Shown one piece after another: positions 8,783 through 59,693 of a stretch of 59,693 bases of DNA (position 1 is the first letter of the stretch; the number at the start of each line of letters is the position of its first letter). Made by a program: the position numbers and the translations under genes. The notes beneath the pieces were generated by a model. The model saw only the letters and a program-made list of their open reading frames with translations, made no database searches and had not been told where the DNA came from. The DNA comes from Octopus bimaculoides (taxonomy: Eukaryota). Location: assembly GCF_001194135.2 (NCBI RefSeq), contig NC_068981.1:63189905-63249597 (forward strand), read 5' to 3'.

Positions 8783-9377
8783 TTTCACATACTGATCCAC
8801 TGGACCCAGTGAATCCCCTACATAGAACTTCTTTTATTTTTATTTTTCATATATTTCTTTGTTTATTCAAAGCAATAGTCTTCCATACTCATAAACATAC
8901 ACACACACACATACACACATAGATGCATACACACACACATACACACACACACACATACATACACACATGCATACACGCACATATGGGACAACATTAATTC
9001 TGAAACTGAACTATTGCAAAGAGAACAACTTCTCTAAAAAAATTTTTTTTATTGGTGAACCCAAGGTTATGACTGAAGACACTTGCCTGAGGTACCACAC
9101 AGTGGGATTGAACTCAGAACCACAGAACCACATAGTTTCAAAGTAAACTTCTTAACCATACAATAAAGAAACAATTATTACTCATTGTTGTGATGTAAGG
9201 AATTATAGTTTTCTGTTCTTCTTCTACATTTATTTTTCCTTTCAGCAACATTCTTAGACACACACACACACACACATGTATGTATGTATGTGTGTGAGAG
9301 AGAGAATTTACTTCTAAAACAGATCCATTGCAGCAAAAGAATCCTATAGAATTCTTTTGCCTCATTTTCTTTTCTTT

Positions 9378-9930
9378 CTTCTATCACATTAGGTGATAAT
9401 GTCTTCACAATCAACCATGTCCCATTGCATAATTTAGGAGGATCTAAATTTCTTGGAAGCATTCTCAGGCCTCCTACTTTCAGGAAAAGTTTATGTGGAA
9501 AAGTTCCATGTGGCTCAAGAGAATTAAGGAACTCTGTTGTATAATGGACCGCTTGATTTTCATCAAGGACTAACTCAACTGATTTGTACTCCTTAATGAC
9601 TGCTGGAATCTTATTTGTTAATTCATGGTTAATCCTTGCTACTGTCTCAGTTTTTGGAGCAAGAATTGCCCTTTCACACAACCATTTATGTGAACTATAA
9701 TTGTTACTCAAGTCTGGAAATACCCTGTTCTCCAATTCAGTTGAGGAATTCACCATGGTAGCTATATGAGCAAAACTGATATCACCATTCCCATCAAATG
9801 GTACTTTCCCATTTCCTAATTTTCCTTTTTGACTCTTGGTACCTGTGGATTGCATCTTGTTGATGTAATTGTTCTAACCGTTTTTCCTGTGCCTCTTGTG
9901 ATTCATTGGCCCTGCGTGCAGCAGGGTTCT
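9378..9930 (-). mobile_element. Helitron RepHel fragment (PIF1-like helicase C-terminal part)
   Basis: LGNGKVP...VFPDLSNNYSSHKWLCERAILAPKTETVARIN...YTTEFLNSLEPHGTFPHKLFLKVGGLRMLPRNLDPPKLCNGT matches Helitron helicase motifs (ERAILAP.N, EFLNSL...G.PPH.L.LKVG, LRNL.PP.LCNGTRL). Confidence 0.88.
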
Positions 9931-20800: not shown

Positions 20801-22880
20801 GGCTGTGTGGTAAGAAGCTTGTTTCCCAACCACATGGTTCTGGGTTCAGTCCCACTGTGTGGCACCTTGGGCACTTGTCTTCTACTATAGCCTTGGACTG
20901 ACCAAAGCCTTGTGAGTGGATTTGGTAGATGGAAACTGAAAGAAGCCTGTTGTATATATATATANNNNNNNNNNNNNNNNNNNNNNNNNNNNNNNNNNNN
21001 NNNNNNNNNNNNNNNNNNNNNNNNNNNNNNNNNNNNNNNNNNNNNNNNNNNNNNNNNNNNNNNNNNNNNNNNNNNNNNNNNNNNNNNNNNNNNNNNNNNN
21101 NNNNNNNNNNNNNNNNNNNNNNNNNNNNNNNNNNNNNNNNNNNNNNNNNNNNNNNNNNNNNNNNNNNNNNNNNNNNNNNNNNNNNNNNNNNNNNNNNNNN
21201 NNNNNNNNNNNNNNNNNNNNNNNNNNNNNNNNNNNNNNNNNNNNNNNNNNNNNNNNNNNNNNNNNNNNNNNNNNNNNNNNNNNNNNNNNNNNNNNNNNNN
21301 NNNNNNNNNNNNNNNNNNNNNNNNNNNNNNNNNNNNNNNNNNNNNNNNNNNNNNNNNNNNNNNNNNNNNNNNNNNNNNNNNNNNNNNNNNNNNNNNNNNN
21401 NNNNNNNNNNNNNNNNNNNNNNNNNNGGTAAATAACAAAATTAAAAACAATGGTTAAAAAACACTATTCTTGAGTATAGTTGTTTACATTGGCACTCACT
21501 GCTTCTTTTATAAACTGGTATTTATTTTATTAACCTCGGACGGATGAAAGGTAAAGTGGACAAGAACAAGATTTATAGACAATCTATAAATAAAATATAA
21601 AGCATTAAAGCAACAGAAATTAATTTGTATTTGTTCCATTTTTTTTTTTTTGTTTTTGTTTTTTTAATTCAAACAAGGCATAAAGGTGATGATGGTGCAG
21701 AGACATGAAGTCTGAAATTAAGCAAAAATTAATAAACAATATTTTATATATTTAAATAAACAATCAAAAACTCACGAAATTCTGAATTGGAGAAACTACA
21801 CTTTAACTGAAACTTGAGACAAAGCTTCACAGCTATACGTATGTGTTAGACCATGTGTTATTGGTACAGTTGTGGCTGTGTGGTTAAATAGCTTGTTTCC
21901 CAACCATGTGGTTTTGTGTTCAGTTCCACTGCACAGCACTTTGGACAAATGTCTTCTACTATAGCTCCTGGTCAGCCAAAGCCTTCTGAGTGGATTTCAT
22001 CATCATCACCATCTTTATTTAACATCCATTGTCCATGCTGGCCTGGGTTGGACGGTTTGACCAGAGCTGGCAAGCTGGGGAGCAGCACCAGGATCCAGTC
22101 TGATTTGGTCTGGTTTCTATGGCTGGATGCCCTTCTTAATGCCAACCACTTCACAAAGTGTGCCAGGTGCTTTTACGTGGCACCACACAGGCACTTTTAT
22201 TTGACCCTCAGTGCTTTACACCACCATAGGGACAGATCTTAACACTTCTGCTGCAGAGTACAGGTCTCCTTGAGTACAGCAAGCCGCCAGGCATCTTTGT
22301 CCTTTGTCATCTCACCTGAAAGGTTCAGCATCCTGAGCATTCTGAACCCTTCATAGGCAGAAACTGACAAAGTCTGTCATCTGTGTGTATGTACTTGTGT
22401 ATACCTGTGCTTAAACATGTAAGAGTTGTAAATGTGGAACAATATTGTCATACAAGCTAGGTTGTTTCTAGTCATCATCATCATCATCCTTTAATGTCCA
22501 TTTTCCATGTTGGCTCCGTGAAAAGCATGTCTAGCTATGGGAATATATTACCTTGCTTGAAAACAGATTGGTGACTGAAAAGGCATCCAACCATAGTAAA
22601 TTTGCCCCAAAATTCTGGCTCCTGAAAGAACAGAAAAGTGGATGTTAGATGATGATGAAATCAATGATCTTGCTTATTCTTCAAGATGATTCAAAGAACT
22701 GGGACAACTGAGAAATGGATTAATAGGATTCCTGACATTGGTTTTAATTTTCTAGAAAGGAAACATTTAGTTATATTAACTTCTAGAAGAATGGAAAAGA
22801 AAGTTAACCTCAGTCAGATTTGAACTCAGAACAGAACATAAAAGGGAGCAACAAAATATTGTAAGGAATTTCGGTTAACC

Positions 22881-24189: not shown

Positions 24190-24904
24190 TCATCATCATC
24201 ATCATCATCATCGTTTAACGTCCGCTTTCCATGCTAGCATGGGTTGGACGATTTGACTGAGGACTGGTGAAACCAGATGGCAACACCAGGCTCCAATCTA
24301 ATTTGGCAGAGTTTCTACAGCTGGATGCCCTTCCTAACGCCAACCACTCAGAGAGTGTAGTGGGTGCTTTTACGTGNNNNNNNNNNNNNNNNNNNNNNNN
24401 NNNNNNNNNNNNNNNNNNNNNNNNNNNNNNNNNNNNNNNNNNNNNNNNNNNNNNNNNNNNNNNNNNNNNNNNNNNNNNNNNNNNNNNNNNNNNNNNNNNN
24501 NNNNNNNNNNNNNNNNNNNNNNNNNNNNNNNNNNNNNNNNNNNNNNNNNNNNNNNNNNNNNNNNNNNNNNNNNNNNNNNNNNNNNNNNNNNNNNNNNNNN
24601 NNNNNNNNNNNNNNNNNNNNNNNNNNNNNNNATCTTCTCACGCACAGCACATTTCCAAAGGTCTCGGTCAGTAGTCATCGCCTCGGTGAGGCCCAATGTA
24701 TGAAGGTCTTGCCTCACCACCTCAGCCCAGGTCTTCCTGGGCCTACCTCTTCCACGGGTTCCCTCAACTGTTAGGGTGTGGCACTTTTTCACACAGCTAT
24801 CCTCATCCATTCTCACCACATGTCCATACCAGCGCAATCGTCTCTCTTGCACACCACAACTGATGCTTCTAACGTTCAGCTTTTCTCTCAAGATACTTAC
24901 ACTC
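24190..24904 (-). mobile_element. 5'-truncated RTE LINE inserted inside a SINE; contains an N gap
   Basis: SILREKLNVRSISCGVQERRLRWYGHVVRMDEDSCVKKCHTLTVEGTRGRGRPRKTWAEVVRQDL; (CAT)n tail on +; closely similar to 1361-2520. Confidence 0.9.
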
Positions 24905-24975
24905 AGCAGTATTTCGTCTGTCGTCACATTCTGAGTTCAAAATCCACCAAGGTTGACTTAGCCTTTCATCCTTTT

Positions 24976-30586: not shown

Positions 30587-31180
30587 CAGGGTCAGACTAA
30601 GACTCTTAGAAGTCCTAAGCACTTTAAAGATTTTGGTACCCCCATATATATGTAATTCAGGGCGTCATGTAAGATGCACTTGTGCTGGTGCTATGTAAAC
30701 ACACCCATGCAGGTGGCATGTAAAAAGCATCAAGCACACTCTGTAAAATGGCTAGCATTAGGAAGGGCATCCAGTTGTAGAAACCATGTCACAACAGACA
30801 ATTTGGAATCTGGACAGCTCCCTGGTTGGCTAGCACCTGTCAAACTGTCCAACCCATACCAGCATGGAAAATGGACATTAAACTATTATGAGGATAATGA
30901 TGACGAAACAATAATAAACCATAAAATATATTAACAAAGTTAACAGCGAGATGGAAAATAATGTTTATTTTTGTATACCTCCACTTTATTTATATTTGAA
31001 GTTTTCTCTTTTTCTTTTCTCTTTTTGATTGCAAAGTCTTTGATCAGATCCTCATTGTGACACCACAAACACTTTGAGATTATATTTCTGATCATATAAA
31101 CTACTTTGAATTTTAGTTTAGCAAGTTTAAAGTGATTTCTTTTGTGTCGTAAACCATTTACCATTTCTGTGATGCTCCCC
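30587..31180 (-). mobile_element. Second copy of the same DNA-transposon end, interrupted by an RTE tail (about 30660-30905)
   Basis: Begins CAGGGTCAGACTAAGACTCTTAG; the reverse complement aligns to 28405-28680 on both sides of the insert. Confidence 0.5.
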
Positions 31181-32112: not shown

Positions 32113-33325
32113 AATGGTACGATGAGTAAATTGTCTAAATTACGCAAAAATGAAAATAACTCTGACATCTAATTATTACAGATATATTTACCAAAATTAC
32201 ATAAAAATATCTTGAAATACTAAAGAGTAAATTTATTCAATAAAATCGCCATCGGCTTAAACCACAGCCTCCAGATGACTTCAGCATCTCCTGCAACTTT
32301 TCTGAACAGTCTCCTTGTTCAAGTTAGTGAATACTGCCATAATCCTTGCCTTCAGTTCGTCTTTGGTGTTACAAGGAGTTTTGTTGGTCTCTCTCTCAAC
32401 TGTACCCCACACATAATAATCAAGGGACTTGCAGTCTGTGGTCACAGAAAATGTCTGACAACACGACTGGGTTCTCCTACTTGTGTGGCATGGTGCAGGG
32501 TCCTGTTGCCAGACATAGGACCTTCCAGCAGCCATCCTCTTGACCCAGGGCAGCACTACCTCCTCTAGGCAGTTAATGTAGGCCTCTGTGTTGAGTCTGA
32601 GGTTGTGTGGGAAGATGAATGAAGGCATAACATTGCCATCACTAGTGATCACTCCAAACACCATGATGTTTGATTTCCATCACTCTCGGTACATGTTTTG
32701 GGGATATGGCAAGCCAACGGTTGTTCTGTGTGTTCACCATTTGATCCTGGCAGAAACTTCTCTTGTCTGAGAAAAAACAAAGCATATTCAGTTGGAGGGG
32801 ATGCTTGAGCTTGTTCAAAAGCTTTGTAGCATGATCTTTCGTCTTGTCCTTGATGGCTTGGGATAAAAATTGGCCCTTTCTCATCTTGTATGATAAGAAA
32901 CTCAGACGCTCCCATGTCACTGGCGATTGACCTGAGGGATTATTGTCAATCATGGCCTGGACTTCACCAACAAATTCAAGAGTTTTTTTCTTATCAGAAT
33001 GATCAGAGTGAGTTTTCCAAGCTGCTGTACTTTTCTAATCACCATTAGACTCATCCAACTCTTTCCAAATCCTCTGCACTGTCCTTGGATTGACACTCAA
33101 ACACTCTGAAATGCTTGTATTGGAGCTTCCGGCATGAATACCAAGCAGTACAGCATGTCATTTCCAAATTTCTGGCAAAGTGAATTGCATCATGGTGCTG
33201 TTTTTCCCACAGATGGTGCCCAACTGACTCTACTATACTGAGCAGTCGACAAAATCAAAAACAAACAATGCAAACGCGTGAAATTAAAAAATATAAAATG
33301 GCAACAATTTAGCCATCGCACCCTA
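32113..33325 (-). mobile_element. Near-full-length degenerate Tc1/mariner (maT/DD37D-like) transposon
   Basis: Imperfect TIRs (TA)AATGGTACGATGAGTAAATTGTC and GCAACAATTTAGCCATCGCACCCTA(TA); minus frames FFSDK..FCQDQMVNTQNNRWLA, MVFGVITSDG.VMP.FIFP...YVWQQDPAPCHTS, LDYYVWGTVE. Confidence 0.85.
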
Positions 33326-39838: not shown

Positions 39839-40101
39839 ATCATCATCATCATCATCATCATCGTTTAACGTCCGCTTTCCATGCTAGCATGGGTTGGACG
39901 ATTTGACTGAGGACTGGTGAAACCGGATGGCAACACCAGGCTCCAGTCTGATTTGGCAGAGTTTCTACAGCTGGATGCCCTTCCTAACGCCAACCACTCA
40001 GAGAGTGTTGTGGGTGCTTTTACGTGTCACCCATATATATATATATATCATCATCATCATCATCATCGTTTAACGTCCGCTTTCCATGCTAGCATGGGTT
40101 G
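39839..40101 (-). mobile_element. Young RTE 3' end plus an adjacent second, shorter tail copy
   Basis: 39839-40031 differs from 1361-1552 at only a few positions; 40048-40101 repeats (CAT)n-CGTTTAACGTCCGCTTTCCATGCTAGCATGGGTTG. Confidence 0.85.
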
Positions 40102-40835
40102 ATGTATATGTGTGTGTGTGTGTGTGTGTTTATACATGTTTATGTCTGAAGCTGCAAAAGTGACTTAAGCACCTAAAGTTTTGTGCTATTACATGTATCA
40201 AGCTAGAAGCTAGTTTCTTGTTTGATGAGTGTTGTTGCACAAAACACTAGGCCCTCTTGTAACTAATGTAGCTTCACAATTAATAAATAAATAACCTTTC
40301 ATCCTCTGACATTAGTGGCCCTCCTCAAATCCTCCTGCTCCCTCTCATAATTCCTTGTCTTGCGAGTTACTCGATGACCCTGCCAGTGCTGGTGCCACAT
40401 TAAAAGCATGCTGTCCACACTAATGTGGTTGGTATTTGGAAGAGCACTGAGCTGTAAAAATCATGCCTAAACTAACCTTACCTGTGCTAATGCCACATAA
40501 AAAGTACCGAGTTCATTCTGCAAACTGGTTGGTTTTAGGAAGGGCATCCAACAGTAAAAACCCTGCCAAAACAGACACTATAGCATAGGGTAGTTTTTCT
40601 ACCTGGCCAGCTCCTTTGAATCACCCTACCCATGCATGCATGGAAGATGATGTCAAACTATGATAATGATGATGATGGTGATGATGATGATGTACTCTAT
40701 TTCACATACTGAGTTCTAATTCTCCAATTTGTATTGTGAAAACTAGGTATATGTTTGTGCGTGCGTGTGTGCATATATATATATATAAATTGATATTCTT
40801 GTGACGGTATTTTTTTTTTCTGTTTTGTTTTACAG

Positions 40836-40859
40836 GGTTAAGTGTCAAAAGAAGGGAAA
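40836..40859 (+). other. 5' UTR part of the first coding exon of the VAMP7-like gene
   Basis: Strong acceptor TTTTGTTTTACAG at 40835; an in-frame TAA lies upstream of the ATG, so at least one untranslated exon must lie further upstream. Confidence 0.75.
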
Positions 40860-41011
40860 ATGATTCATTACAGTTGCATATGTAGGGGAGAGACGATTCT
40901 GTGCTCGCAGCTCAAAACGACGTCAATGCAAAACTTTGAAAATGTTGTTGCTGACATGCTGCCTAATATTCCAACACACCAAAACAAGTCGACTACATAC
41001 ACATCAGATAG
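40860..41011 (+). CDS. VAMP7: VAMP7-like longin R-SNARE, coding exon 1 (start of longin domain)
   Basis: MIHYSCICRGETILCSQLKTTSMQNFENVVADMLPNIPTHQNKSTTYTSD(S) resembles the VAMP7 N-terminus (ARGTTILA...IP..NNKLTYSH); donor AG|GTAAGT, phase 2. The symbol denotes family membership; orthology is probably to the Vamp7-like/VAMP8 branch. Confidence 0.88.
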
Positions 41012-41019
41012 GTAAGTGG

Positions 41020-41058
<39 letters not shown>

Positions 41059-42260
41059 AGTGAGTGTTGTCTGTGTGTGTGTGTATGTATTTATATGCGC
41101 ATGTATGTGTATGTATTTATATGCACATGTATGTGTGTTAGGAAGGGCATCCAGCCATAGAAACTATGCTAAAACAGATATGGAGCCTGAACAGCCCTTC
41201 AGCTGGTCAGCTCCTACCAAACCATGAAACCCATGCCAGCATGGAAAACAGACATTAAATGATGATATATCTATATATTTCTAGCAATGCAGGTGCTGAC
41301 TTGCATGGTTAGTCACTTTTAGTGATAATTGTATTTGTGCCTTTTGGTTTTAAATTGCATCTAGTCACTTTAATAATTCTATACACATACACACACTCAC
41401 ACATGCACTGTAAAAGTGTGTGAATAGAACTTCCAATCAGTTAATGTCTTGTAATTCCCTCCTAATCGATTTGTTTAATTCTCCTGCTATTTTTCCAGAT
41501 CTCCTCCTGACTGTTTTGTGTAATTACTCAGCCACTAATAGTGTGGTGGTCATTCTGAAGTTATTGAGACAGTTACATACCAACCAGTTATTAAAGCTCT
41601 GTTGACATAAAGTTGTTGTTTAGCTGAAGGTCAAAACTTAACAAGCAGGCCCATAATCAAAGTCATTTCGGTCATGCTAGTCCATCTTTAATTTTTGTGG
41701 TACTGTACTTTACTTATAAATAAAACATTTCAGACCAAAATTTACAGTCAAAAAAGTTAGATTGAATTATATAACAAGATGACTTTGGAAGACACAAACT
41801 TCCATGTGAGATACAACAGGGTTTGGAAAAATAGCCATGATGTTTGAGTGCTTAGACATGGTTCAAAGCTTGCTTCCTGACCACATGGTTCTGAGTTCAG
41901 TCCCACAGCATGACATCTTGAGCAAGTGTCTTCTACTATAGCCCCGGGTTGACCAAAGCCTTGTGAGTGTGGGTGTCTTTGTGTCTGTGTTTGCCCCCCC
42001 CCCCACTACTTGACAACTGGTGTTGGCATGTTTACATCCCTGTAACTTAGTGATTTGGCAAAAGAAAGCAATAGAATAATTACCAAACTTTAAGAAAAAT
42101 AAAATATAAGTACTAGGGTTGATTCATTTGACTAACAATTCTTCAAGGCAATGCCCCAGCATGGTCACAGTCTAATGTGTTGTGATTTGAGGAAAAAGAA
42201 TTGTTTTTAGCATGTTGAACAACAGTAGAGAGACTTTTTTTTTTGGTTTAATTGGCTTAA

Positions 42261-42480
42261 CCCCTTAGCATTTAAACTGGCCATATCCAGCCAAAATATT
42301 CTACCTGTTTTATGTTCAAACTGGCTAGATCCAGTTTCTCACACTTACCCTACAATCACATTCTAAAAATATACTATCTCATCATTGGAATCTCGAAGCT
42401 ACATGGTAATGCATGATTAAATCAAAGTAATGTGAATAAATAAGCATTGCATATGACAGAGTAATCTGAATGCTAAAGGG
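42261..42480. mobile_element. piggyBac-type MITE (220 bp)
   Basis: TIRs CCCCTTAGCATT / AATGCTAAAGGG flanked by TTAA (42257-42260) and TTAG; a shortened copy lies at about 36290-36415. Confidence 0.7.
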
Positions 42481-42788
42481 TTAGTTTGTGAGCTGTGATT
42501 GTAACATTAGTATAATATAATGCATCTTTTGTAGGTTATTGCTCTATTACTTTTATTTAGCCACTGAATATCAAGTGCAGACCACTATTGTGAATACTTA
42601 AAGGATACCCTGTTCTTTTCCAGTTTAGTTTATGTCAATCCATACATTACAAATCTCCATTCTATAACAAACCAGGTTATCATTGTAAATATTTTTGTTA
42701 TTGTTAGAATTTGGTATGACCGAATATTTTAGGAACTGTAAAGATATGTCTATTTATTTACCTTATTTTATTTTCATTTCTTTTCCAG

Positions 42789-42885
42789 TTACTCATTCCA
42801 CTGTAAAGTAGAAAATGGCATTTTGTTTCTGTGTGTTGCAGACCCAAATATGGGAAAGCAAGGACCTCATTCATTCCTTTCAGAA
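42789..42885 (+). CDS. VAMP7: VAMP7-like coding exon 2 (longin domain)
   Basis: TTTTCCAG acceptor and GTAAGA donor; (S)YSFHCKVENGILFLCVADPNMGKQGPHSFLSE resembles YLFHY...IVYLCITD...AF.FL.E. Confidence 0.9.
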
Positions 42886-43671
42886 GTAAGATTTCAATAT
42901 ATAATTCATGTCTGTGTTTACTTATTAGTCTGTTTTATTCCATATCTTAACATTAAGCAAATAAAATAAACACTCACCTTTGTTAGAAAACATCTCAATA
43001 CTTACTTTAAAACAGTTTTGGTGTCTTAATTCCTACATATGTAAAGTAAAAGACCCCCTTCGGTCATGAATGACCATAGAATTACACCAAGAAAGTTCTC
43101 TTCCGAGGCAAGCTTGTTCTATGGAAGACCAGCAATTGCCCATGCATACCAGCCTTCCCTCTTTTACACCAGTAATGTTATCCAAGGGAAAAGCAAAGGT
43201 CAATACAGCTTGGCACCAGTGACATCGCAACTCATTTCTGCAGGTGAATGAACTCGAGTGACGTGAAATAAAGTGTCTTGCTCAAAAACACAACTCACAG
43301 CCTGGTCTGGGAATTGAGCTCACTACCTCTGTACTACTGAGTCATTATGAGATATTAAAATCTATTGATGAAATAATCTAGTTCAGTGGTTCTCAGGCTG
43401 GTCATTAGCAACTTCTTGGGGGCATTGTATACTCATAAAAAACAATAAATATAAAGGGGACACTGTACAGGTGACTGGTGGGAGGATTTAGATTCAACAT
43501 GATTTTTCTTAGAAATATACTGCTCAAACGAGCACGTTTTCAAAAGTATCTGTTAAGGTTGGAATATTGAATAAGATATTGCCTTATCTGTGAGCAAAAA
43601 ACATGACTGATGATGTGCAAAAATTCAGTATAATTTCCTCTATAAGTATTTAACTTAAGGGACATTCAAGC

Positions 43672-43953
43672 GAGGGCGTTGCCTGTGTCGCTGGACTGGC
43701 TCCTGTGCAGGTGGCACATAAAAAACACCACTTGAGCGTGGCTGTTGCCAGTACTGTCTGACTGGCTTTCGTGCCGGTGGCACGTAAAAGCACTCACTAC
43801 ACTCTCGGAGTGGTTGGCGTTAGGAAGGGCATCCAGCTGTAGAAATTCTGCCAGATCAGATTGGAGCCTGGTGCAGCCATCTGGTTCGCCAGTCCTCAGT
43901 CAAATCGTCCAACCCATGCTAGCATAGAAAGCGGACGTTAAACGATGATGATG
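43672..43953 (+). mobile_element. RTE 3' UTR fragment with (GAT)n tail
   Basis: Closely similar to 1-245. Confidence 0.8.
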
Positions 43954-44155
43954 ACAGTAATCCATGCAAAAATGTCCAAAAGGAGGCTCATACTGAAATT
44001 GGGATAATGTAAGAAAGTTTTAATTTTTACATTTAATTTTTTTTGCATTCTATATATTCATTAGAAAGAACTGTGTATCGCCATAGGAAAGTGTCTTCTA
44101 CAATAATCCCAAGCTAACGTCTTGCAAGTAGACTTGACAGAAACTTTGCAGAAGC

Positions 44156-44201
<46 letters not shown>

Positions 44202-44759
44202 TAAGGTTTGAGCATATTAGGTAATTGCCTGGAAGTCTCACACATTAAGAAAGCCTAATGCTGATCTATGCTTTCTGTGATTGTGTATATAGGGACGCCA
44301 GTGCATTACTTAGCTCAATGGCTGGCTTTCTCAGAGTTCTCGTCTTGCAAATTTCACTCACAAGGCTTTGGTTAACCTAGGTTTTGGTGTACAAAGAAAA
44401 TAACATAACATTCCTTAGAATATTAGGAATTAATTCTAGACTGACTCTACAACTCTACCCTTGAAGCTGGTGAAAGCATTCTAGCATTCTGTGTTTTACT
44501 GTTTATTCCCAGATCAGCCTTAATCAAGCAGACTTATGGTCAAAGTCGTTCCAGTTGTGACCATCACATACTTTTGTATATCAGGGACTTAATTGCTCAA
44601 GGTATCTGTCTTTATTGATGACAGTAGGGTGTAATTTGTGGTCGATTTTGTTGCCATTTCTAGCAGGTCAAGCGATCAAATAAAACCTTTGCTGTTGGTT
44701 CTGTATTTAACAGTCTTACAATAAAGCAATTGAGTGTAATATTTTTTTCTTTGTTTTTC

Positions 44760-45480
44760 ATCCGTAAGAGGAGACATAGGTCTTACAACTACTGTAAGTC
44801 TGTTGCAAACTTCAGTTAATAGATCTATTTGGATTACGTTATTCATTATATATCTTCGTTTTTGGATTTGGTTTGCAAGATTCTTTATATGAGTTCGCGT
44901 GTTGAAGTATATTTTCTGGTGTCTGGGGAGAGTTATTCTCTTTTAGTGTCTTATTTAACACGCTCACCGGTAAAGTTTCCATTCATTTACTTATTTATAT
45001 TTCCTAAAATTTTCGTTGCCTCATAACAATCTTTCCAGTAGTCGTTGACTCTGTCCGTTATGCGAGCTGCGTTCTTTTTGTTTGTGCGCATGTGTGGGTC
45101 TGTAGGTCTGTATTATTATTAATATTTTTCTTGACTACTTCCAGATCTCTTTTCAATTGTAAACACCCTCAAATAGCTCGTTTTAATTTTTCCTTTTAGT
45201 TTTCCCCAATCTGTTGTATTATGAAGAGATTATATGAATCTGTTCGACATTCAGCCAAGCTAAACCAACGTTTTGTTGCAAGCCATTAAAAAAAAAAAAA
45301 ACTCGAGTTTATAAAGTTACTTCCCTTGTCTTGAATTGCCTCCCTTGCTCCATTTTAAATTCGCTTCTCGCGATATTAATTGATTGCAGAATTCTATTAA
45401 ACATTGTTTTCTGTACGGGATGAGAATACGTTTCTCATGTGTTATATCATACTAAATATCAGCAAATAACGGCAAGCAGC
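44760..45480. promoter_or_regulatory. CpG-retaining island in intron 2 of the SNARE gene; candidate internal promoter
   Basis: About 23 CpG in 720 bp versus about 2 in 42181-42900 (manual counts); part of it (about 44850-44990) is a dispersed repeat also seen near 10651. Confidence 0.4.
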
Positions 45481-45859
45481 TTCCTTTGTTTAGCTGTAAT
45501 GGTGTCTTGCAGTTTACTTTGGGCAGCTTTTTTCATGATTTCATTACTTGTGATGTATTCACACTGGGTGATCTTCAGGATATTTCTAAAGCACCATTCA
45601 CAATATTGTAAATCCTCTCCGTCCACACATATGTTTTACTTGCATGCAATGCAGTCGAAATGGCAATAGATGCGTATAAAGGAAGTTTAATCCCTTGGTA
45701 AACGAATGAGTTCTGACCATATTAGTCTTAATCACTGGAAAATTGCCATCACTTTGTCAACTGTACTCTTGATATCAATTTCTGCTTTTCCATTTGTATC
45801 AGTATTACTGCACATGTGTAGTGTGTGTGTTAAACACGTACATACATACATACATGCAC

Positions 45860-45896
<37 letters not shown>

Positions 45897-46108
45897 ACAT
45901 TAGGCTTTCTTAATGTGTGAGACTTTCAGGTAATTACCCATATATATGTATGACATTAAAATAAAGATGGAGAATCATACATCTACAATTTTTTATAATT
46001 ATTAAATTCATAATTTATATATATATATATATATATATATATGTTTCTTGAACATCAATATTCTCTATTTGCTTCTTTTAAATAAATCAAATTTATTCTT
46101 TTCAATAG

Positions 46109-46210
46109 ATCAAAGATACATTCCTGAATGGCCGCCTAGCAGGCCGAGCATCAGCCGCCTTCAGTCATGAGTTTGATCGAGATTTTGGACACGTACTTCA
46201 GAGAGAAATG
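46109..46210 (+). CDS. VAMP7: VAMP7-like coding exon 3 (end of longin domain; last codon is ATG)
   Basis: CAATAG acceptor and ATG|GTATTT donor; IKDTFLNGRLAGRASAAFSHEFDRDFGHVLQREM; 102 nt, phase 0-0. Confidence 0.88.
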
Positions 46211-46950
46211 GTATTTTCAATTATCATAAATTGTCTTTTTATTTTTTATTATTTTTGTATGATGACAAAAGAGTGATGGAAGGGCACTACTGCAGTACTG
46301 AAGAAAGGGAAATAATATATTTAATTTGTTCTGTAGTTCATTTTATGCCCTTTTCTCTATGATAGCACTGTTTGGACGAATATATTGTTGAGGCGCTGTC
46401 TTACAGCTGAATGTCCTTCCTCTCCTTGTCGCTAACCCTTTCTTGTGCTTCAAGTAAGGGCTCTCTTATTTCATGTTTTCAAAATTGATTTGAAAACAGA
46501 AGAGTTGATGACAATGCAGCTTGTAGCTCATGATTTTCCTGAAACAAGAACAAGTATGATTGTAGAGAACAACATAGAATAAACATGACAAAACAAACAG
46601 TGTAAGACTTTGCAATACCATATGATAGTAGAGGCAAAGACGGCTTTGGCAGAATTTGAACTCAGAACATGAAGAGCTAGTAGAAATGCCACTAAACATT
46701 TTGCCTGACTTTTGCTGATAATATTGCAAGCTTGTTACCTTTATAATAATAAGAATAATAGTTGCTTCAAATTTAGATACGAAGCCAGCAGTTTTAGGAG
46801 GAGGTGTTAGTTGATGACATTGACTCTAGTACTTGGCTTATTTTATTAACCTCGAAAGGATGAAAAGCAAAGCTGACCTTGGCAGAATTTGAACTCTGAA
46901 CATAGTGATGGATGAAATGCTGCTAATCATTTTGCCAGCTTGTTGCTTTC

Positions 46951-46983
<33 letters not shown>

Positions 46984-47204
46984 TAATTATAATCCTTTCT
47001 ATTATAGGCACAAGGCCTGAAATATGGGGTAGGGGGATAGTCGATTACATCGACCCCAGTACTCAACTGGTACTTCATTTATTGACCCTGAAATGATGAA
47101 AGGTCAAGTCAACTTTGGTGGAATTGGAACTCATAACATAGTGATGGGCGAAATACTGCTATGAATTTCGTCCAGTGTGCTAACAATTCTGCCAGCTCGT
47201 TGCC

Positions 47205-47248
<44 letters not shown>

Positions 47249-47608
47249 AATGATGGTTTCAAATTCTGGCACAAGGCCAGCAATTTGGGGGGAGGAAGTA
47301 AGTCGATTGCATTTTATCAACCTTGAAACGATGAAAAGCAAAGTCAATCTTGGCAGAATTTGAACTCAGGACAAAAAGATGAACAAAATGCTGTTAAGCA
47401 TTTTGCCTGGTGTGCTAACAGTTCTGCCAGCTCACTGCCTTCTATTAATATTATCATCGTTAATAATAATGATAATAATAATGATAATAACAACAACATC
47501 TTACATATACATATAGATATTTAATCACAAGCACATGCACGCATGCCCACACATACACATGCACAAACAGAAATTTATAATTGCATATATGTATATAATA
47601 TTTTAAAG

Positions 47609-47767
47609 GAAACATTTTCAAAACCCGGTGCTGGAAGTGGTCTCTCTCAACTCCAAAGTCAAGTAAATGAAGTGAAAGGTATTCTTACACAGAACATTGA
47701 AAAAGTTCTGGAACGTGGAGACAAACTGGATGACTTGATGGATAAAACATATGAATTAGAAGAGCAG
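47609..47767 (+). CDS. VAMP7: VAMP7-like coding exon 4 (R-SNARE motif)
   Basis: TTTTAAAG acceptor and CAG|GTTAGT donor; ETFSKPGAGSGLSQLQSQVNEVKGILTQNIEKVLERGDKLDDLMDKTYELEEQ contains the zero-layer Arg; 159 nt, phase 0-0. Confidence 0.93.
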
Positions 47768-49048
47768 GTTAGTAATGATATTTATCGTTAGTTTCTCTTA
47801 TTTGTTTCTCACCCTCTCTCTCTCACTTATTGTTTTCTCCTCTTACACCTCCTCTCTTTTTCTTTACCTTTTCCCATTTTCATCCCTGTCTATCTTGTCA
47901 CTGATATATTATTAGTGTTTTCTCTGTAGCTGTTCAGGTTGGGTGCCAACTGTATCAGTCTCACCGACCTGAGTGTGCTTGTAATAGTCATAGCCACTGT
48001 TCCACTCTGTAACAAATTTATTGAAAGAATAGTAACAATTTTGACAGTAGTTACAAATTTAGTAAAAGAATTTTGCCAATAGTATGCTGGTGCTTGGGAC
48101 AAGCTAACATGGAATTTTGATGGAAAGTTTTAGTGTAGATCAATTTAAAACAAGAATTTTGTATCATAAGACCAAGGATGGTCTCAAGCAGGTTTATATC
48201 AAAGGGGTTCTTTTACTCTTTTACTTGTTTCAGTCATTCGACTGCAGCCATGCTGGAGCACCACCTTGAAAGGTTTTAGTTGAACAAAGCAACTCCAGGA
48301 CTTATTTTTTTAAGCCTAGTTCTTATTCTGTCAGTCTCTTTTGCTGAATCACTAAGTTACAGGGATGTAAACACACACTCCAACACCCCGTTGTCAAGTG
48401 ATGATAGGAGCGGGGGACAAACACAGATGCAAAGATATAGATACATTATTGTCATTTACCAAAAAAACCCAAAAAAACCCCCCAAAGGNNNNNNNNNNNN
48501 NNNNNNNNNNNNNNNNNNNNNNNNNNNNNNNNNNNNNNNNNNNNNNNNNNNNNNNNNNNNNNNNNNNNNNNNNNNNNNNNNNNNNNNNNNNNNNNNNNNN
48601 NNNNNNNNNNNNNNNNNNNNNNNNNNNNNNNNNNNNNNNNNNNNNCCCCCCCCCCCACAAAAAAACAACTACATCATCATTATCATCATTGTTTAACACT
48701 TGTTTTCCATGTTAGCATGAATTGAACAGTTTGAAAGGAGCTAGCCAGACTCTAATTGTCTGTTGTTGCATGGTTTCTATGGCTGGATGTCCTTCCTAAT
48801 GCCAATCACTTTACAGAGTGTGCTGGGTACTTTCCATGTGCCACCGGCACTGGCGCATTTATGCAAAACCAACATGAGTGCATTTTGCATGGCACTGGCA
48901 CCTGTAAAGGTGCAAACCTGTATGTATGAATGAATAACATTTTTACTTAGCTTGAAGGGTCTTCTCAAGTACAGTAATTTGCCACAACTCTTGGTCCCTT
49001 GTCATAGAAGTGAAAAACTGTAATATTCTCTTTTACTTTTTTTTTCAG

Positions 49049-49240
49049 TCTATCAAATTCCACAAGACGTCTCGTAGCATAGCAAAGAAATTCTGGTGGA
49101 AGAATACCAAGATGACCTGTCTGATGGTCGGTGGTGTACTTATACTGCTTACCATCATTATTATCATTATTCTCTATTCTACTGGTGTATTTTCAAGTTC
49201 TGATAGTAGTTCTTCAAAGCCCACCACTGCTGCTCCTTAA
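49049..49240 (+). CDS. VAMP7: VAMP7-like terminal coding exon (end of SNARE motif, TM helix, lumenal tail, stop)
   Basis: Long polypyrimidine acceptor; SIKFHKTSRSIAKKFWWKNTKMTCLMVGGVLILLTIIIIIILYSTGVFSSSDSSSSKPTTAAP*; the five exons sum to 702 nt (233 aa plus stop). Confidence 0.93.
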   Translation, partial: SIKFHKTSRSIAKKFWWKNTKMTCLMVGGVLILLTIIIIIILYSTGVFSSSDSSSSKPTTAAP

Positions 49241-50568
49241 GCAGAGACAATTAAGACCATACACAGACAAAGATTCGACAAGTTGCTCTGTATAAATATA
49301 TTTTATATATCTTACACATATATATATATTTCTATGATTCCGAAAAAATTTTTTCCCTCTATCATCAGTCTGCTATAATTCCATTTTTTATCTTTTATGT
49401 GTCATCTCCCTTATAATTCCATATTTTTGTTTTATGTCATCAAGTTTTTATACACCGCCCCACCCATCTATTTTTTTTTGTTGATTTGGATCTTGTTGGT
49501 GAAGATGATTTATCTGATGCTAATGGAAAACAACAATGATGATGATGAGAATTATTATGACTCTGTTGAATATATGTGCATCATTAAAATCAATTAAAAT
49601 TTTAATCAATGTTTTAAAATTCATTGGACATTCCTGGTGGTTACCCTCCCACATATGTAGATACGCCTGACGAAAATATTTGATAATGTTGTTTTGGATT
49701 TAACTCATTTGATTTGATCTACTCTCACCCCCAACCTGCCACCCCACCATATTTTTGCTAAGGGTTCTCTGCAGTCTATGATGGACAACATGTAATCTTG
49801 CATAACCATTACAACAAATTTGATTTGGTAAACCAATTCAACCACTGGCATCATGGACTGATTTTATATGTTGATTTGGTGATTGAGAATACCAGATATT
49901 TTGGTCAATGGAATTATCTAATCATCAAATCATGGTGTATATAACTGAGTATTCCCCCAGACTTTTGTCCCCTTTATGTAATCATCAAACAAAATCATTG
50001 TAATACTATGTGACAAAACTGGCCCTTTGAATAATAGGCATGATAAGCTTTCATAGTTCTTGTCTCCCCTGTTTCATTGATAGGGCATTGGGGTGATGCA
50101 AAGCTGTTGTGGAAGATACTTGGGAATGAGATGGTTTGGCACAGTTGTTTGCTGGCATCGTTGATTTGATGATGACTTATTTGACATCAGGCTTTTCTAT
50201 GTTTCTTGTTTTAATGTTTCTCTTATTCTCTGTCTGTCTGTCTGTTTGTTTATGTGTGTGTGTGTGTGCATATTTCTCTTTATGTTATGAGAAGAAAAAT
50301 GTTTATGTCATTTGTGTTCAATTAATAAATCGTAATGTCTCTCTTTCTCTCTGTGTATGTATGTATTTCTGCATTCTCATGCTTGTGAGTGTGTTTGCTT
50401 CAGGTGCCAAAAAGTACTATTGTCAAAAAGGTTCAATGTCTAATCAGCCAATGTGAAATTGCCAGCACCCAAGCTGCTGTGCCCAATCATCTCGTACCAA
50501 AGTTATCTAAGGGTCAGTGTTGGGATCAAATCTGAGACCTCTTGATCACACAGCTGACATTTTTACAT

Positions 50569-58978: not shown

Positions 58979-59693
58979 ACGGGAGTTACTATGGGACTAT
59001 AAGAAAAAATAACTGTATTGGAAGCTGCCGTGATGGAGTCACGCAACTGGCATGGCCAGAATCTGAAAATTATTATACAAACGGAACAGACCACGCTGGA
59101 AGAAATGACAGAAATTATCCAGGTTGGTGAGTACCGACTTGTAGTCGTGGTAGAAGGTCGCCAACCTCGTTGCTTCCAGTGTGGTAAAAAGGGCCACGTT
59201 AGGGCGGACTGTAAGGAGAACGAGAAAAAGAAAGCAAAGGAGCAAGAAGAAATAACTTTAACGCCGGCGGAACAAACACCTCTACCAGAAGAAAAAGCAG
59301 GCGAGGGGTGGAACACAGTAACCTACAAGAGGAAAATAAATTCACCCTCCCCTGCAAAGTAAAAGAAAAAAACAAGCGACGAAAGACAAGTTAAAAAACC
59401 TAGAAAGAAAGAAAACTGCTACACAGCGGTTCGCAGCTCGAATCGAGAGCTAGCGAACCGGCTGGCAGTAATGCATGCTGGAAAAAAAAAATACTGAAAA
59501 TAAGGATGGTTTTGACATCTTTAAGACTAATAGGAAAAACTATAACATTTTAGCTAACGATTTTCGCAAGGATGTAGGCCCTCCCAGATTGGACATTACC
59601 GTTAATCTATATGAGGGTCTCATCACTCCGACAACGCGAGCCCGAGAAAAAGAAAAGGAGGCGGATAACCCTCCCCCTCCAGACATCGAATAA
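58979..59693 (+). mobile_element. Degenerate non-LTR retrotransposon ORF1 (gag-like, CCHC zinc knuckle), cut by a gap and the window end
   Basis: ...RLVVVVEGRQPRCFQCGKKGHVRADCKENEKKK contains CX2CX4HX4C, followed by a K/E/P-rich low-complexity region; stops break the frame. Confidence 0.75.

What the first reader, a model, noticed from the sequence alone, without database searches (positions are those of the whole stretch)
40860..49240. Longin R-SNARE that looks like a longin-bearing VAMP8 (Vamp7-like) rather than canonical VAMP7
The C-terminus AKKFWWKNTKM...IILYSTGVFS matches human VAMP8 as recalled (ARKFWWKNVKM...IVLFATGAFS) much better than VAMP7 (ARAMCMKNLKL...CGGFTWPSC). As I recall, human VAMP8 has an ATG-only first coding exon, a 159-nt exon ending ...EDLEAT, and a last exon starting SEHF. 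Here exon 3 ends in ATG, exon 4 is exactly 159 nt ending ...YELEEQ, and exon 5 starts SIKF. This fits the published idea that endobrevin/VAMP8 arose from an invertebrate Vamp7-like gene by longin loss, and it suggests the VAMP8 start codon descends from the last codon of the final longin exon.
Basis: partly seen in the sequence, partly recalled or inferred. Interest (0 to 1): 0.7.

Follow-up and report, generated by a model that had tools for sequence, protein, structure and literature searches.

The report
Octopus Vamp7-like longin SNARE gene
This is an intact octopus gene for a membrane-fusion protein of the already described "Vamp7-like" family, the closest longin-bearing relative of vertebrate VAMP8; it is an ordinary gene, though its exon layout adds modest support to a published idea about how VAMP8 arose.

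Summary
Window 40860-49240 (+) holds a five-exon gene (152/97/102/159/192 nt, all GT-AG) encoding a 233-aa tail-anchored R-SNARE with a complete longin domain. The assembly gap lies inside intron 4 and does not touch coding sequence.

The protein is not canonical VAMP7. Both halves score far higher on profiles of invertebrate "Vamp7-like" proteins. It lies outside a VAMP7 clade with 98-99% bootstrap support. Its exon layout is identical to the Lingula orthologue.

VAMP8 is nearest to this group: its sister group is Vamp7-like in 91 of 100 bootstraps and never VAMP7. A single clade joining the two is weakly supported (6-20%).

- Both cited introns, and the 159-nt unit, also exist in canonical VAMP7.
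- FWWKN also occurs in invertebrate VAMP7, VAMP2 and fungi.
- Diagnostic features are the absence of VAMP7's two extra introns, the 97/102-nt longin exons, and the ...L(F/Y)(A/S)TGV end of the membrane anchor.
- The ATG-only first coding exon was seen only in a mammal. Shark and bichir VAMP8 start with a five-codon exon, so the "start codon = last longin codon" idea is doubtful.

The family and the evolutionary idea are already published. A side finding is that teleost "VAMP8" genes still carry longin exons.

The parts
40836..40859 (+). 5' untranslated part of the first coding exon. It follows the acceptor ttacag (40830-40835) and contains an in-frame TAA at 40839-40841.
   Evidence: Sequence read directly. 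This implies at least one upstream non-coding exon, which was not located.
40860..41011 (+). [quoted passage not shown] The donor is GTAAGT and the exon ends in phase 2.
   Evidence: The length and phase are the same in O. sinensis and Lingula. The homologous phase-2 intron is also present in canonical VAMP7.
42789..42885 (+). Coding exon 2 (97 nt), the middle of the longin domain. It ends ...HSFLSE in phase 0.
   Evidence: A 97-nt exon ending FLTE (Lingula) or FLNE (Osmerus 'VAMP8') is specific to the Vamp7-like type. VAMP7 is split differently (58+138 or 58+50+88 nt).
46109..46210 (+). Coding exon 3 (102 nt, phase 0-0), the last longin exon (IKDTF...VLQREM). Its last codon is ATG (46208-46210).
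   Evidence: The terminal Met is conserved in Vamp7-like proteins, VAMP7, and fungal and plant homologues.
47609..47767 (+). Coding exon 4 (159 nt, 53 codons, phase 0-0). It encodes the linker and most of the SNARE motif. The 0-layer arginine R153 is the codon CGT at 47714-47716.
   Evidence: Searches show it is collinear with the 159-nt VAMP8 exon of Tenrec and Polypterus. R153 and G154 are invariant in alignment A1. Pfam Synaptobrevin covers aa 129-211.
47768..49048 (+). Intron 4, which contains the assembly gap 48489-48645 and a SINE-like repeat copy at 48782-48799.
   Evidence: The O. sinensis intron 4 has no gap and no extra exon.
49049..49240 (+). Coding exon 5 (192 nt including TAA at 49238-49240). 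It encodes the C-terminal SNARE layers (SIKFHKTS...), the juxtamembrane KKFWWKNTK, the transmembrane anchor (aa 192-215, about 49112-49183) and a Ser/Thr/Pro-rich luminal tail (aa 216-233, 49184-49237).
   Evidence: The AlphaFold2 model has a continuous helix over residues 128-214. There is no intron in the transmembrane region, unlike VAMP7.

Best explanation
The locus is an intact, ordinary protein-coding gene. It is the octopus orthologue of the metazoan "Vamp7-like" R-SNARE, a paralogue of canonical VAMP7 that predates bilaterians.

The product has four parts:
- An N-terminal longin (profilin-like) domain, aa 1-~120.
- A short linker.
- An R-SNARE motif with the 0-layer arginine R153.
- A C-terminal transmembrane anchor followed by a short Ser/Thr/Pro-rich luminal tail.

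Inferred mechanism:
- The SNARE motif zippers with three Q-SNARE helices on the target membrane to drive fusion, most likely in the endosomal/lysosomal or secretory-granule pathway, as VAMP7 and VAMP8 do.
- The longin domain folds back on the SNARE motif or binds sorting adaptors, and so controls when and where the protein is active.

Evolutionary placement:
- Vertebrate VAMP8/endobrevin is the closest longin-less relative of this family. It most probably descends from a Vamp7-like gene by loss or bypass of the three longin exons.
- VAMP8 keeps the undivided 159-nt SNARE exon and the single terminal exon.

Shown here: gene structure, domains, fold, family assignment and shared exon layout. Inferred: the trafficking step, autoinhibition, and descent of VAMP8 from this family.
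For: Gene and domains:
- Gene model and open frame.
- Pfam Longin and Synaptobrevin hits.
- The AlphaFold2 model has pLDDT 86-95 over residues 1-120. Its best Foldseek matches are VAMP7 longin crystal structures 4B93, 4AFI and 2VX8, at rmsd 1.0-2.3 A.
- R153 and G154 are invariant.

Orthologues:
- 94% identical to O. sinensis, and 49-62% to other molluscs and Lingula over roughly the full length.
- Relatives occur in a bryozoan, an annelid, chelicerates, hemichordates, a crinoid, an acoel and cnidarians.

Family assignment (profile scores in bits):
- Longin half: 148 on a Vamp7-like profile against 58 on a VAMP7 profile.
- SNARE plus membrane-anchor half: 141 on Vamp7-like, 100 on VAMP8, 70-82 on VAMP7.
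- The VAMP7 clade excludes the protein at 98-99% bootstrap.
- The 152/97/102/159 exon layout is identical in Lingula and O. sinensis.

Link to VAMP8:
- The eleven database VAMP8 sequences score 109-132 bits on the Vamp7-like profile against 81-96 on the invertebrate VAMP7 profile. The reverse comparison agrees.
- The sister group of VAMP8 consists only of Vamp7-like or fish VAMP8-like sequences in 91 of 100 bootstraps, and is never VAMP7.
- Both share the membrane-anchor end ...L(F/Y)(A/S)TGV, where VAMP7 has CGGxxWPxC.
- The Osmerus gene annotated 'VAMP8' carries the Vamp7-like longin exons. These include an intact but unannotated 102-nt exon ending in ATG.
Against: - A single clade of Vamp7-like plus VAMP8 gets only 6-20% bootstrap support. 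Cnidarian and crinoid members float near the base. Only neighbour-joining on 63-93 columns could be run.
- The Vamp7-like profile is generic: VAMP2, VAMP3 and VAMP4 also score about 95 bits on it. Part of VAMP8's closeness may reflect slow evolution of Vamp7-like proteins.
- Absence of two introns is a weak character unless VAMP7's extra introns are ancestral. That polarity was not tested.
- No remnant of longin exons was detectable in the Tenrec, Scyliorhinus or Polypterus VAMP8 loci.
- No expression or functional data exist for this gene.
Confidence: 0.74

Rival explanations
1. The gene is simply a divergent octopus orthologue of canonical VAMP7 (TI-VAMP). Its VAMP8-like look would then be an artefact of comparing it with the human sequences only.
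For: - The best full-length match among solved structures is VAMP7 (4b93, 1e-27).
- Sources name the relatives 'VAMP7' or 'VAMP7-like'.
- FWWKN is also present in invertebrate canonical VAMP7.
Against: - Canonical VAMP7 from a nemertean (Tubulanus) and amphioxus is 69-70% identical to human VAMP7. These form a 98-99% clade with vertebrate VAMP7 that excludes the window protein.
- The window protein scores 58 against 148 bits (longin half) and 70-82 against 141 bits (C-terminal half) on VAMP7 against Vamp7-like profiles.
Confidence: 0.04
2. The gene is a Vamp7-like longin SNARE, but VAMP8 did not descend from this family. VAMP8 would have arisen from canonical VAMP7 or from a brevin. The similarities would be retained ancestral characters plus slow evolution of Vamp7-like proteins.
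For: - Joint monophyly has low support (6-20%).
- WWKN, the terminal Met, the 159-nt unit and both introns are ancestral to the whole family.
- VAMP2, VAMP3 and VAMP4 score about 95 bits on the Vamp7-like profile.
- No longin remnants were found in true VAMP8 loci.
- PMC6143360 recovered endobrevin as a separate cluster.
Against: - VAMP8 was never sister to VAMP7 (0 of 100). Its sister group was Vamp7-like or fish VAMP8-like in 91 of 100.
- The profile advantage is 20-30 bits in both directions.
- The ...LFATGVI membrane-anchor end is shared.
- The unsplit SNARE exon and unsplit terminal exon are shared.
- Longin-bearing proteins with VAMP8-like C-terminal halves exist: P0290, Osmerus P0029 and Salvelinus P0309.
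Confidence: 0.2
3. The locus is a pseudogene or an assembly chimera, because the gap at 48489-48645 joins unrelated sequence or hides a missing exon.
For: The window has 12 gaps and many repeats. The sequence beside this gap is homopolymer-rich.
Against: - The gap is intronic.
- There are no frame disruptions, and all splice sites are canonical.
- The gap-free O. sinensis orthologue has the same five exons, and its intron 4 is collinear on both sides of the window gap.
- The exon 4/5 junction aligns without indels to every homologue.
Confidence: 0.02

Closest known systems
Vamp7-like R-SNAREs of invertebrates. This subgroup of the VAMP7-type R-SNAREs is attributed to Kloepper, Kienle and Fasshauer 2008. 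That paper is not held in the library; the idea is quoted in PMC6143360.
   Same: - Longin domain, R-SNARE motif and transmembrane anchor.
- 49-62% identity to other mollusc and brachiopod members, and 39-49% to chelicerate and hemichordate members.
- Exon layout 152/97/102/159 identical to Lingula.
- Membrane-anchor end ...LYSTGV.
- Ser/Thr/Pro-rich luminal tail, as in other lophotrochozoan members.
   Different: Nothing of substance. Cephalopod members have two extra residues in the first longin loop.
VAMP8 / endobrevin (vertebrates)
   Same: - R-SNARE motif (52% identity over SNARE motif plus juxtamembrane region) and KKFWWKN.
- Membrane-anchor end LFATGV(I/F).
- A collinear 159-nt (53-codon) phase 0-0 exon, followed by a single terminal exon starting S(E/I)(H/K)F.
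- No intron inside the SNARE motif or the transmembrane region.
   Different: - VAMP8 has no longin domain and is about 100 aa long.
- It has a very short luminal tail.
- It has NV(E/D)RILARG where the octopus protein has NIEKVLERG.
- Its first coding exon is ATG only (mammal) or five codons (shark, bichir). No longin remnants are detectable.
Canonical VAMP7 / TI-VAMP (SYBL1)
   Same: - Same domain order and the same longin fold (rmsd 1-2.3 A to 4B93, 4AFI and 2VX8).
- Three shared intron positions: the phase-2 intron in the first third of the longin domain, the phase-0 intron after the terminal Met of the longin domain, and the phase-0 intron before S(V/I)xF.
- The same 159-nt linker plus SNARE unit.
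   Different: - About 43-44% identity over the SNARE motif plus juxtamembrane region.
- VAMP7 has an extra phase-1 intron in the SNARE motif (NI|D) and a phase-0 intron in the transmembrane region.
- Its longin exons are divided differently.
- Its C-terminus is CGGxxWPxC.
- It forms a separate, well-supported clade.
Teleost genes annotated 'VAMP8' that carry longin exons (Osmerus mordax P0029, Salvelinus P0309)
   Same: - A 97-nt exon ending FLNE, a 102-nt exon ending ATG, a 162-nt SNARE exon and a single terminal exon.
- The C-terminal half scores equally on Vamp7-like and VAMP8 profiles (about 120 bits each).
   Different: - The fish longin region is divergent (84 bits on the Vamp7-like profile).
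- There is an extra intron in the first longin exon.
- The annotated isoforms skip the 102-nt exon through a GC donor.
- Neighbouring genes (hnRNP-like RRM genes) differ from those recalled for human VAMP8, so this may be a separate vertebrate paralogue.

Membership tests
R-SNARE (synaptobrevin family) | SNARE heptad motif with an arginine at the central 0 layer | tested here: met
   Pfam PF00957 at 6e-30 over aa 129-211. R153 in ...VLERGD... aligns with the ERD/ARG arginine of VAMP2 and VAMP8 and is invariant in A1.
R-SNARE (synaptobrevin family) | C-terminal transmembrane anchor directly after the juxtamembrane basic/aromatic patch | tested here: met
   KKFWWKNTK is followed by 24 hydrophobic residues (aa 192-215). 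The AlphaFold2 helix is continuous to residue 214.
R-SNARE (synaptobrevin family) | Forms four-helix complexes with Qa, Qb and Qc SNAREs and drives membrane fusion | not testable with these tools
   This needs biochemical pairing and fusion assays.
Longins | N-terminal longin (profilin-like) fold: five beta strands and three helices in the order two strands, helix, three strands, two helices | tested here: met
   Pfam PF13774 at 1e-13. The AlphaFold2 model has strands at 2-9, 12-18, 43-48, 53-59 and 62-68 and helices at 26-36, 75-89 and 106-121, with pLDDT 86-95. The top Foldseek hits are the VAMP7, Sec22b and Ykt6 longin domains.
Vamp7-like (invertebrate paralogue of VAMP7) | Groups with invertebrate Vamp7-like sequences rather than with VAMP7, in both the longin and SNARE halves | tested here: met
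   Profile scores are 148 against 58 bits (longin half) and 141 against 70-82 bits (C-terminal half), with cephalopods left out of the profiles. The protein nests among mollusc sequences in both trees.
Vamp7-like (invertebrate paralogue of VAMP7) | Gene layout with an unsplit SNARE exon and an unsplit terminal exon, and longin exons of about 152/97/102 nt | tested here: met
   Window 152/97/102/159/192. Lingula 152/97/102/159/246. O. sinensis is identical to the window. Ptychodera is 149/202/156/147, with one intron lost. This feature is my own working criterion, not a published definition.
Canonical VAMP7 / TI-VAMP | Membership of the VAMP7 clade, which includes lophotrochozoan, amphioxus and vertebrate VAMP7 | tested here: not met
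   The VAMP7 clade has 98-99% bootstrap support and excludes the window protein.
Canonical VAMP7 / TI-VAMP | C-terminal CGG(F/L)xWPxC tail, and the VAMP7 exon layout with a phase-1 intron in the SNARE motif and an intron in the transmembrane region | tested here: not met
   The tail is ...LYSTGVFSSSDSSSSKPTTAAP. Neither intron is present.
VAMP8 / endobrevin | Brevin architecture: no longin domain, about 100 aa | tested here: not met
   The protein has a complete longin domain and is 233 aa long. It can be a relative or pro-orthologue of VAMP8, not a VAMP8.
VAMP8 / endobrevin | Specific relationship of the SNARE motif and membrane anchor to VAMP8, rather than to VAMP7 or to VAMP1-5 | tested here: inconclusive
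   The direction of the evidence is consistent: the sister group is Vamp7-like in 91 of 100 bootstraps, the profile advantage is 20-30 bits, and the anchor end is shared. Joint clade support is only 6-20%.
   Tenrec is ATG|159|144, Polypterus 15|159|144 and Scyliorhinus 15|153|144, all phase 0 and collinear. The same positions occur in canonical VAMP7, so the test does not discriminate.

The most novel reading that the evidence does not exclude
The loss of the longin domain that produced VAMP8 may have been gradual, and it may be incomplete in some living vertebrates.

- Some teleosts (Osmerus, Salvelinus) keep a VAMP8-type gene with a full, open, spliceable set of Vamp7-like longin exons. In Osmerus this includes an unannotated 102-nt exon ending in ATG.
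- Predicted isoforms in Nematostella, Osmerus and Salvelinus all skip this in-frame exon. This suggests an ancient alternative-splicing switch between a version with an intact longin domain and one with a disabled longin domain.
- VAMP8 would then have arisen when transcription or translation start moved to the 3' end of the last longin exon. The candidate start is the Met five codons from its end (VMxxxM|E in many Vamp7-like proteins, against MERRA|E and MAAKA|E in bichir and shark VAMP8).
- The mammalian ATG-only exon would be a later shift of the splice donor.
Probability: 0.3. Interest if true: 0.55.

Novelty: already known. Interest (0 to 1): 0.3.

Why it matters
For the window itself, little changes. 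It holds a normal trafficking gene that public annotation already predicts in a sister species, though under a misleading plant-derived name ("VAMP711").

The comparative results have some value for SNARE evolution:
- They put gene-structure evidence behind the published proposal that endobrevin/VAMP8 derives from a longin-bearing Vamp7-like gene.
- They show which of the intuitive arguments do not discriminate: WWKN, the 159-nt exon, the two introns and the terminal ATG.
- They point to teleost "VAMP8" genes with longin exons as possible living intermediates.
- A Vamp7-like gene in cnidarians, molluscs and hemichordates gives tractable systems for asking what a "VAMP8 with a longin domain" does.

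Tried and rejected
- **Primary literature.** Kloepper et al. 2008 (doi 10.1093/molbev/msn151) and 2007 (PMC1951749) are not held. Only a secondary citation was found. Searches for phrases about longin loss gave nothing useful.
- **Canonical VAMP7 in Octopus.** The VAMP7 search listed only the best 120 of 664 hits, almost all vertebrate. The window itself holds no second VAMP gene.
- **Genomic loci not on record.** The shark second paralogue (P0035, P0036) and Salvelinus P0309 could not be retrieved. Shark longin exons and the Salvelinus 102-nt exon therefore remain unchecked.
- **Remnants of longin exons.** tblastn searches in or upstream of the Tenrec, Scyliorhinus and Polypterus VAMP8 loci found nothing below E = 0.3.
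- **Organism names.** No names were available for several informative proteins, notably P0290 (full longin domain with a VAMP8-like tail).
- **Phylogeny.** Only neighbour-joining with bootstrap could be run. Deep nodes are unresolved.
- **Outgroup sequences.** The VAMP2, VAMP4 and VAMP8 parts are corroborated by PDB alignments and by database VAMP8 sequences.
- **Rejected readings.** Canonical VAMP7, and pseudogene or gap artefact.
- **Window ORFs.** A Pfam scan of other ORFs found only fragments of mobile elements. No tRNA genes were found.

Full report
**1. What is in the sequence**

Reading 40500-49700 and assembling the exons gives a + strand gene with five coding exons:
- 40860-41011 (152 nt)
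- 42789-42885 (97 nt)
- 46109-46210 (102 nt, ending AGA GAA ATG|gt)
- 47609-47767 (159 nt, ending ...YELEEQ)
- 49049-49240 (192 nt with TAA, starting SIKF)

All introns are GT..AG. An in-frame TAA lies seven codons upstream of the ATG, and an acceptor at 40835 implies an upstream non-coding exon. The product is 233 aa.

**2. The gap**

The N run 48489-48645 lies inside intron 4. The Octopus sinensis orthologue (P0001, 94% identical) maps to a gap-free locus with the same 152/97/102/159/192 structure. Its intron 4 aligns to the window on both sides of the gap, in the same order and orientation. All homologues align across the exon 4/5 junction without indels. The gap therefore does not affect the gene. 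The window is from an octopus closely related to O. sinensis but not identical to it.

**3. Domains and fold**

- Pfam finds Longin (aa 33-106, 1e-13) and Synaptobrevin (aa 129-211, 6e-30).
- An AlphaFold2 model built from a 21-sequence alignment has pLDDT 86-95 over residues 1-120, a classic longin topology, and one long helix over residues 128-214.
- Foldseek's best hits are the VAMP7 longin structures 4B93, 4AFI and 2VX8 (rmsd 1.0-2.3 A), followed by Sec22b and Ykt6.
- The 0-layer arginine (R153) is invariant.
- A hydrophobic anchor (aa 192-215) is followed by an 18-residue Ser/Thr/Pro-rich luminal tail.

**4. Which family**

A protein search returned full-length relatives from molluscs, Lingula, chelicerates and hemichordates. 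A profile search of 1.84 billion representatives, followed by name look-ups, added Bugula, Dimorphilus, ticks, a crinoid, an acoel, Hydractinia and Nematostella. Sources name these proteins inconsistently as VAMP7, VAMP7-like, VAMP711, VAMP722-like or VAMP8.

Canonical VAMP7 is a different, very conserved protein. Tubulanus and amphioxus VAMP7 are 69-70% identical to human VAMP7.

Profile tests, with cephalopods excluded from the profiles, place the window protein firmly in the Vamp7-like group (bit scores):

| Region | Vamp7-like profile | VAMP8 profile | VAMP7 profiles |
|---|---|---|---|
| Longin half | 148 | not scored | 58 |
| C-terminal half | 141 | 100 | 70-82 |

Neighbour-joining trees give the VAMP7 clade 98-99% bootstrap support, with the window protein outside it.

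**5. Relation to VAMP8**

- The eleven database VAMP8 sequences score 109-132 bits on the invertebrate Vamp7-like profile and 81-96 bits on the invertebrate VAMP7 profile. Vamp7-like proteins score 96-118 bits on a VAMP8 profile and 64-95 bits on VAMP7 profiles.
- In the 93-column tree, VAMP8 nests among bilaterian Vamp7-like sequences. Its sister group consists only of Vamp7-like or fish VAMP8-like sequences in 91 of 100 bootstraps, and is never VAMP7.
- The all-inclusive clade has only 6% support, or 20% in the 63-column tree.
- The Vamp7-like profile is also fairly generic: VAMP2, VAMP3 and VAMP4 score about 95 bits on it.

The sequence signal is therefore consistent but moderate.

**6. Gene structures**

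Exact spliced mapping of proteins onto their loci gave the following coding exon lengths.

| Gene | Coding exon lengths (nt) |
|---|---|
| Lingula Vamp7-like | 152/97/102/159/246 |
| Ptychodera Vamp7-like | 149/202/156/147 |
| Tenrec VAMP8 | 3 (ATG)/159/144 |
| Polypterus VAMP8 | 15 (MERRA)/159/144 |
| Scyliorhinus VAMP8 | 15 (MAAKA)/153/144 |
| Callorhinchus VAMP7 | 146/58/138/91/68/93/69 |
| Tubulanus VAMP7 | 146/58/50/88/91/68/93/63 |

Three points follow.

(b) The same two introns occur in canonical VAMP7. One follows ...SAQM| and the other precedes |SVSFKTT, both in phase 0. VAMP7's two SNARE exons sum to 159 nt. The human literature agrees: the longin domain is residues 1-114 on exons 2-4, and skipping exons 5 and 6 keeps the reading frame (PMC3123573). 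These features are ancestral to the family and do not discriminate.

(c) The features that do discriminate are:
- VAMP7's additional phase-1 intron in the SNARE motif (NI|D) and its transmembrane intron. Both are absent from Vamp7-like genes and from VAMP8.
- The 97- and 102-nt longin exons of the Vamp7-like type.

**7. The C-terminal argument**

FWWKN is not a VAMP8-specific character. Tubulanus VAMP7 has SMWWKN, VAMP2 has YWWKN and chytrid homologues have WWKN. Only chordate VAMP7 has MCMKN. The end of the membrane anchor is informative: Vamp7-like proteins and VAMP8 share ...IL(F/Y)(A/S)TGV(I/F), whereas all canonical VAMP7 proteins end in CGGxxWPxC.

**8. The start-codon idea**

- The Met codon ending the last longin exon is conserved in Vamp7-like proteins, VAMP7, fungi and plants. 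The next exon starts with Glu in Vamp7-like proteins and in VAMP8.
- In Tenrec, the VAMP8 ATG sits at exactly that position (...GAGAAATG|gtgagc).
- In shark and bichir, the first coding exon has five codons and ends in Ala. The N-termini of coelacanth, lungfish and sturgeon VAMP8 (MEGGA-EE, MERRA-EE, MERKA-EE) fit the same pattern.
- Parsimony therefore makes the five-codon exon ancestral and the mammalian ATG-only exon derived. A donor created directly after the ATG (ATG GAG... to ATG|GTGAG) would be enough. This last step is my inference.
- Many Vamp7-like proteins have a Met at the fifth codon from the exon end (VMAREM|E, VMAQDM|E). That is an alternative candidate ancestor of the VAMP8 start, but five residues are too few to test it.
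- No longin remnants are detectable in the true VAMP8 loci examined.

**9. A side finding outside the window**

The Osmerus mordax gene annotated "VAMP8 isoform X1" (P0029; L001) has longin exons of 102+71 and 97 nt (the latter ending FLNE), then a 162-nt SNARE exon and a terminal exon.

In the annotated intron there is an intact 102-nt exon at L001 10846-10947. It runs tctttcag|ATC...CTGATG|gttcgt and encodes IHSMFTNSPLITRVAFAQPNEFSADLHQVLGKLM. It matches octopus exon 3 in length, phase and terminal ATG.

- Salvelinus has a similar isoform (P0309). Its longin part is 67% identical to Osmerus and its C-terminal part 80%.
- The fish longin region scores higher on the Vamp7-like profile than on the VAMP7 profile (84 against 57 bits).
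- In trees these fish proteins sit next to VAMP8, and next to an unnamed full-length longin protein (P0290) that has a VAMP8-like tail.
- The Osmerus neighbours (hnRNP-like RRM genes) differ from the human VAMP8 neighbourhood as I recall it. Sharks have a second VAMP8-like gene (P0035, P0036). The fish gene may therefore be a separate vertebrate paralogue rather than the VAMP8 orthologue.
- Nematostella's "VAMP8 isoform X2" (P0304) also skips the 102-nt exon.

**10. Mechanism**

Shown: a tail-anchored R-SNARE with an intact longin domain. Inferred from VAMP7 and VAMP8 biology (established knowledge, not tested here): the protein pairs with endosomal/lysosomal or granule Q-SNAREs to drive fusion, and the longin domain provides autoinhibition and adaptor-mediated sorting.

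**11. Verdict**

- The classification as Vamp7-like and not VAMP7 is well supported.
- The link to VAMP8 is plausible and consistent, but not robustly resolved here.
- The start-codon inference is probably wrong in detail.
- The family and the evolutionary proposal are already in the literature, and the gene is predicted in a sister species, so novelty for the window is low.

Noticed in passing
L001 10846-10947 (Osmerus mordax CM076175.1, locus fetched): An intact, unannotated 102-nt phase 0-0 exon lies inside the annotated intron of a teleost 'VAMP8' gene. It has good splice sites, encodes IHSMF...LGKLM and ends in ATG. It is homologous to octopus exon 3. The annotated isoform skips it, using a GC donor at 10759|10760.
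   Followed up: partly
P0304 (Nematostella 'VAMP8 isoform X2'), P0029 (Osmerus), P0309 (Salvelinus): Predicted isoforms from a cnidarian and two teleosts all omit the same in-frame last longin exon (...FLEE|ALYS, ...FLNE|ADAS, ...FLNQ|ADYS). This may be an old alternative-splicing event that disables the longin fold. No transcript data were checked.
   Followed up: no
P0290 (JGI/IMG, 209 aa, 2-kb contig, organism unknown): A full-length longin protein whose C-terminal half scores equally on Vamp7-like and VAMP8 profiles (123 and 125 bits) and ends ...LLATGVIPTGSS. It is the nearest neighbour of the VAMP8 clade in the neighbour-joining tree. Its source organism could not be identified.
   Followed up: partly
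P0035 / P0036 (Chiloscyllium plagiosum 'synaptobrevin-like protein 5' / 'VAMP8 isoform X6'): Sharks appear to have a second VAMP8-like gene (ADTFQKTS type, like the teleost gene) beside true VAMP8 (SEHFKTTS type). This suggests two vertebrate descendants of the Vamp7-like gene. The locus was not retrievable.
   Followed up: partly
P0030 (Scomber scombrus 'VAMP8 isoform X1', 254 aa): [quoted passage not shown] This is either tandem exon duplication or a faulty gene model.
   Followed up: no
window 49184-49237, and the homologues listed: Lophotrochozoan Vamp7-like proteins carry a 15-45-residue Ser/Thr/Pro-rich luminal tail after the anchor, which could be O-glycosylated. It is missing in chelicerate, hemichordate and vertebrate relatives.
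   Followed up: no
window 100-117, 1488-1505, 3753-3770, 20304-20321, 22122-22139, 24320-24337, 30758-30775, 39970-39987, 40535-40552, 41138-41155, 43820-43837, 48782-48799: Twelve copies, on both strands, of a SINE-like repeat core TTAGGAAGGGCATCCAGC (0 expected by chance). Three lie in introns 1, 2 and 4 of the gene.
   Followed up: partly
window 9178-9855 (-), 59018-59362 (+), 1545-2414 (-), 24370-24927 (-), 32281-32953 (-): Fragments of mobile elements:
- A Pif1-type helicase 2B domain (Helitron-like; Pfam 1.5e-9).
- A CCHC zinc-knuckle gag-like ORF.
- Two ORFs sharing ...ERRLRW(F/Y)GHVVRM(N/D)EDSCVKKCH..., which resemble the tail of a retrotransposon reverse transcriptase (no Pfam hit).
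- A transposase-like ORF pair (no Pfam hit).
   Followed up: partly
window, whole: There are twelve assembly gaps (22-985 N) and long microsatellite tracts of TA/TG/CA and ATAATA type. No second VAMP-family gene and no tRNA gene is present in the 59.7 kb.
   Followed up: yes
L010 (Polypterus senegalus CM029065.1): A minus-strand gene model of 782 aa combining Cnd2 (condensin) and Synaptobrevin domains spans the whole VAMP8 locus. It is probably a fused model of a condensin subunit gene and another VAMP gene.
   Followed up: no
names: Automatic names for this family are inconsistent. Examples are 'VAMP711' (O. sinensis, Argonauta), 'VAMP722-like' (Haliotis), 'VAMP7' or 'VAMP7-like' (oysters, Lingula, Limulus), 'VAMP7B-like' (Antedon) and 'VAMP8' (Nematostella, teleosts). 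The plant names suggest that the best named match was not animal VAMP7.
   Followed up: no
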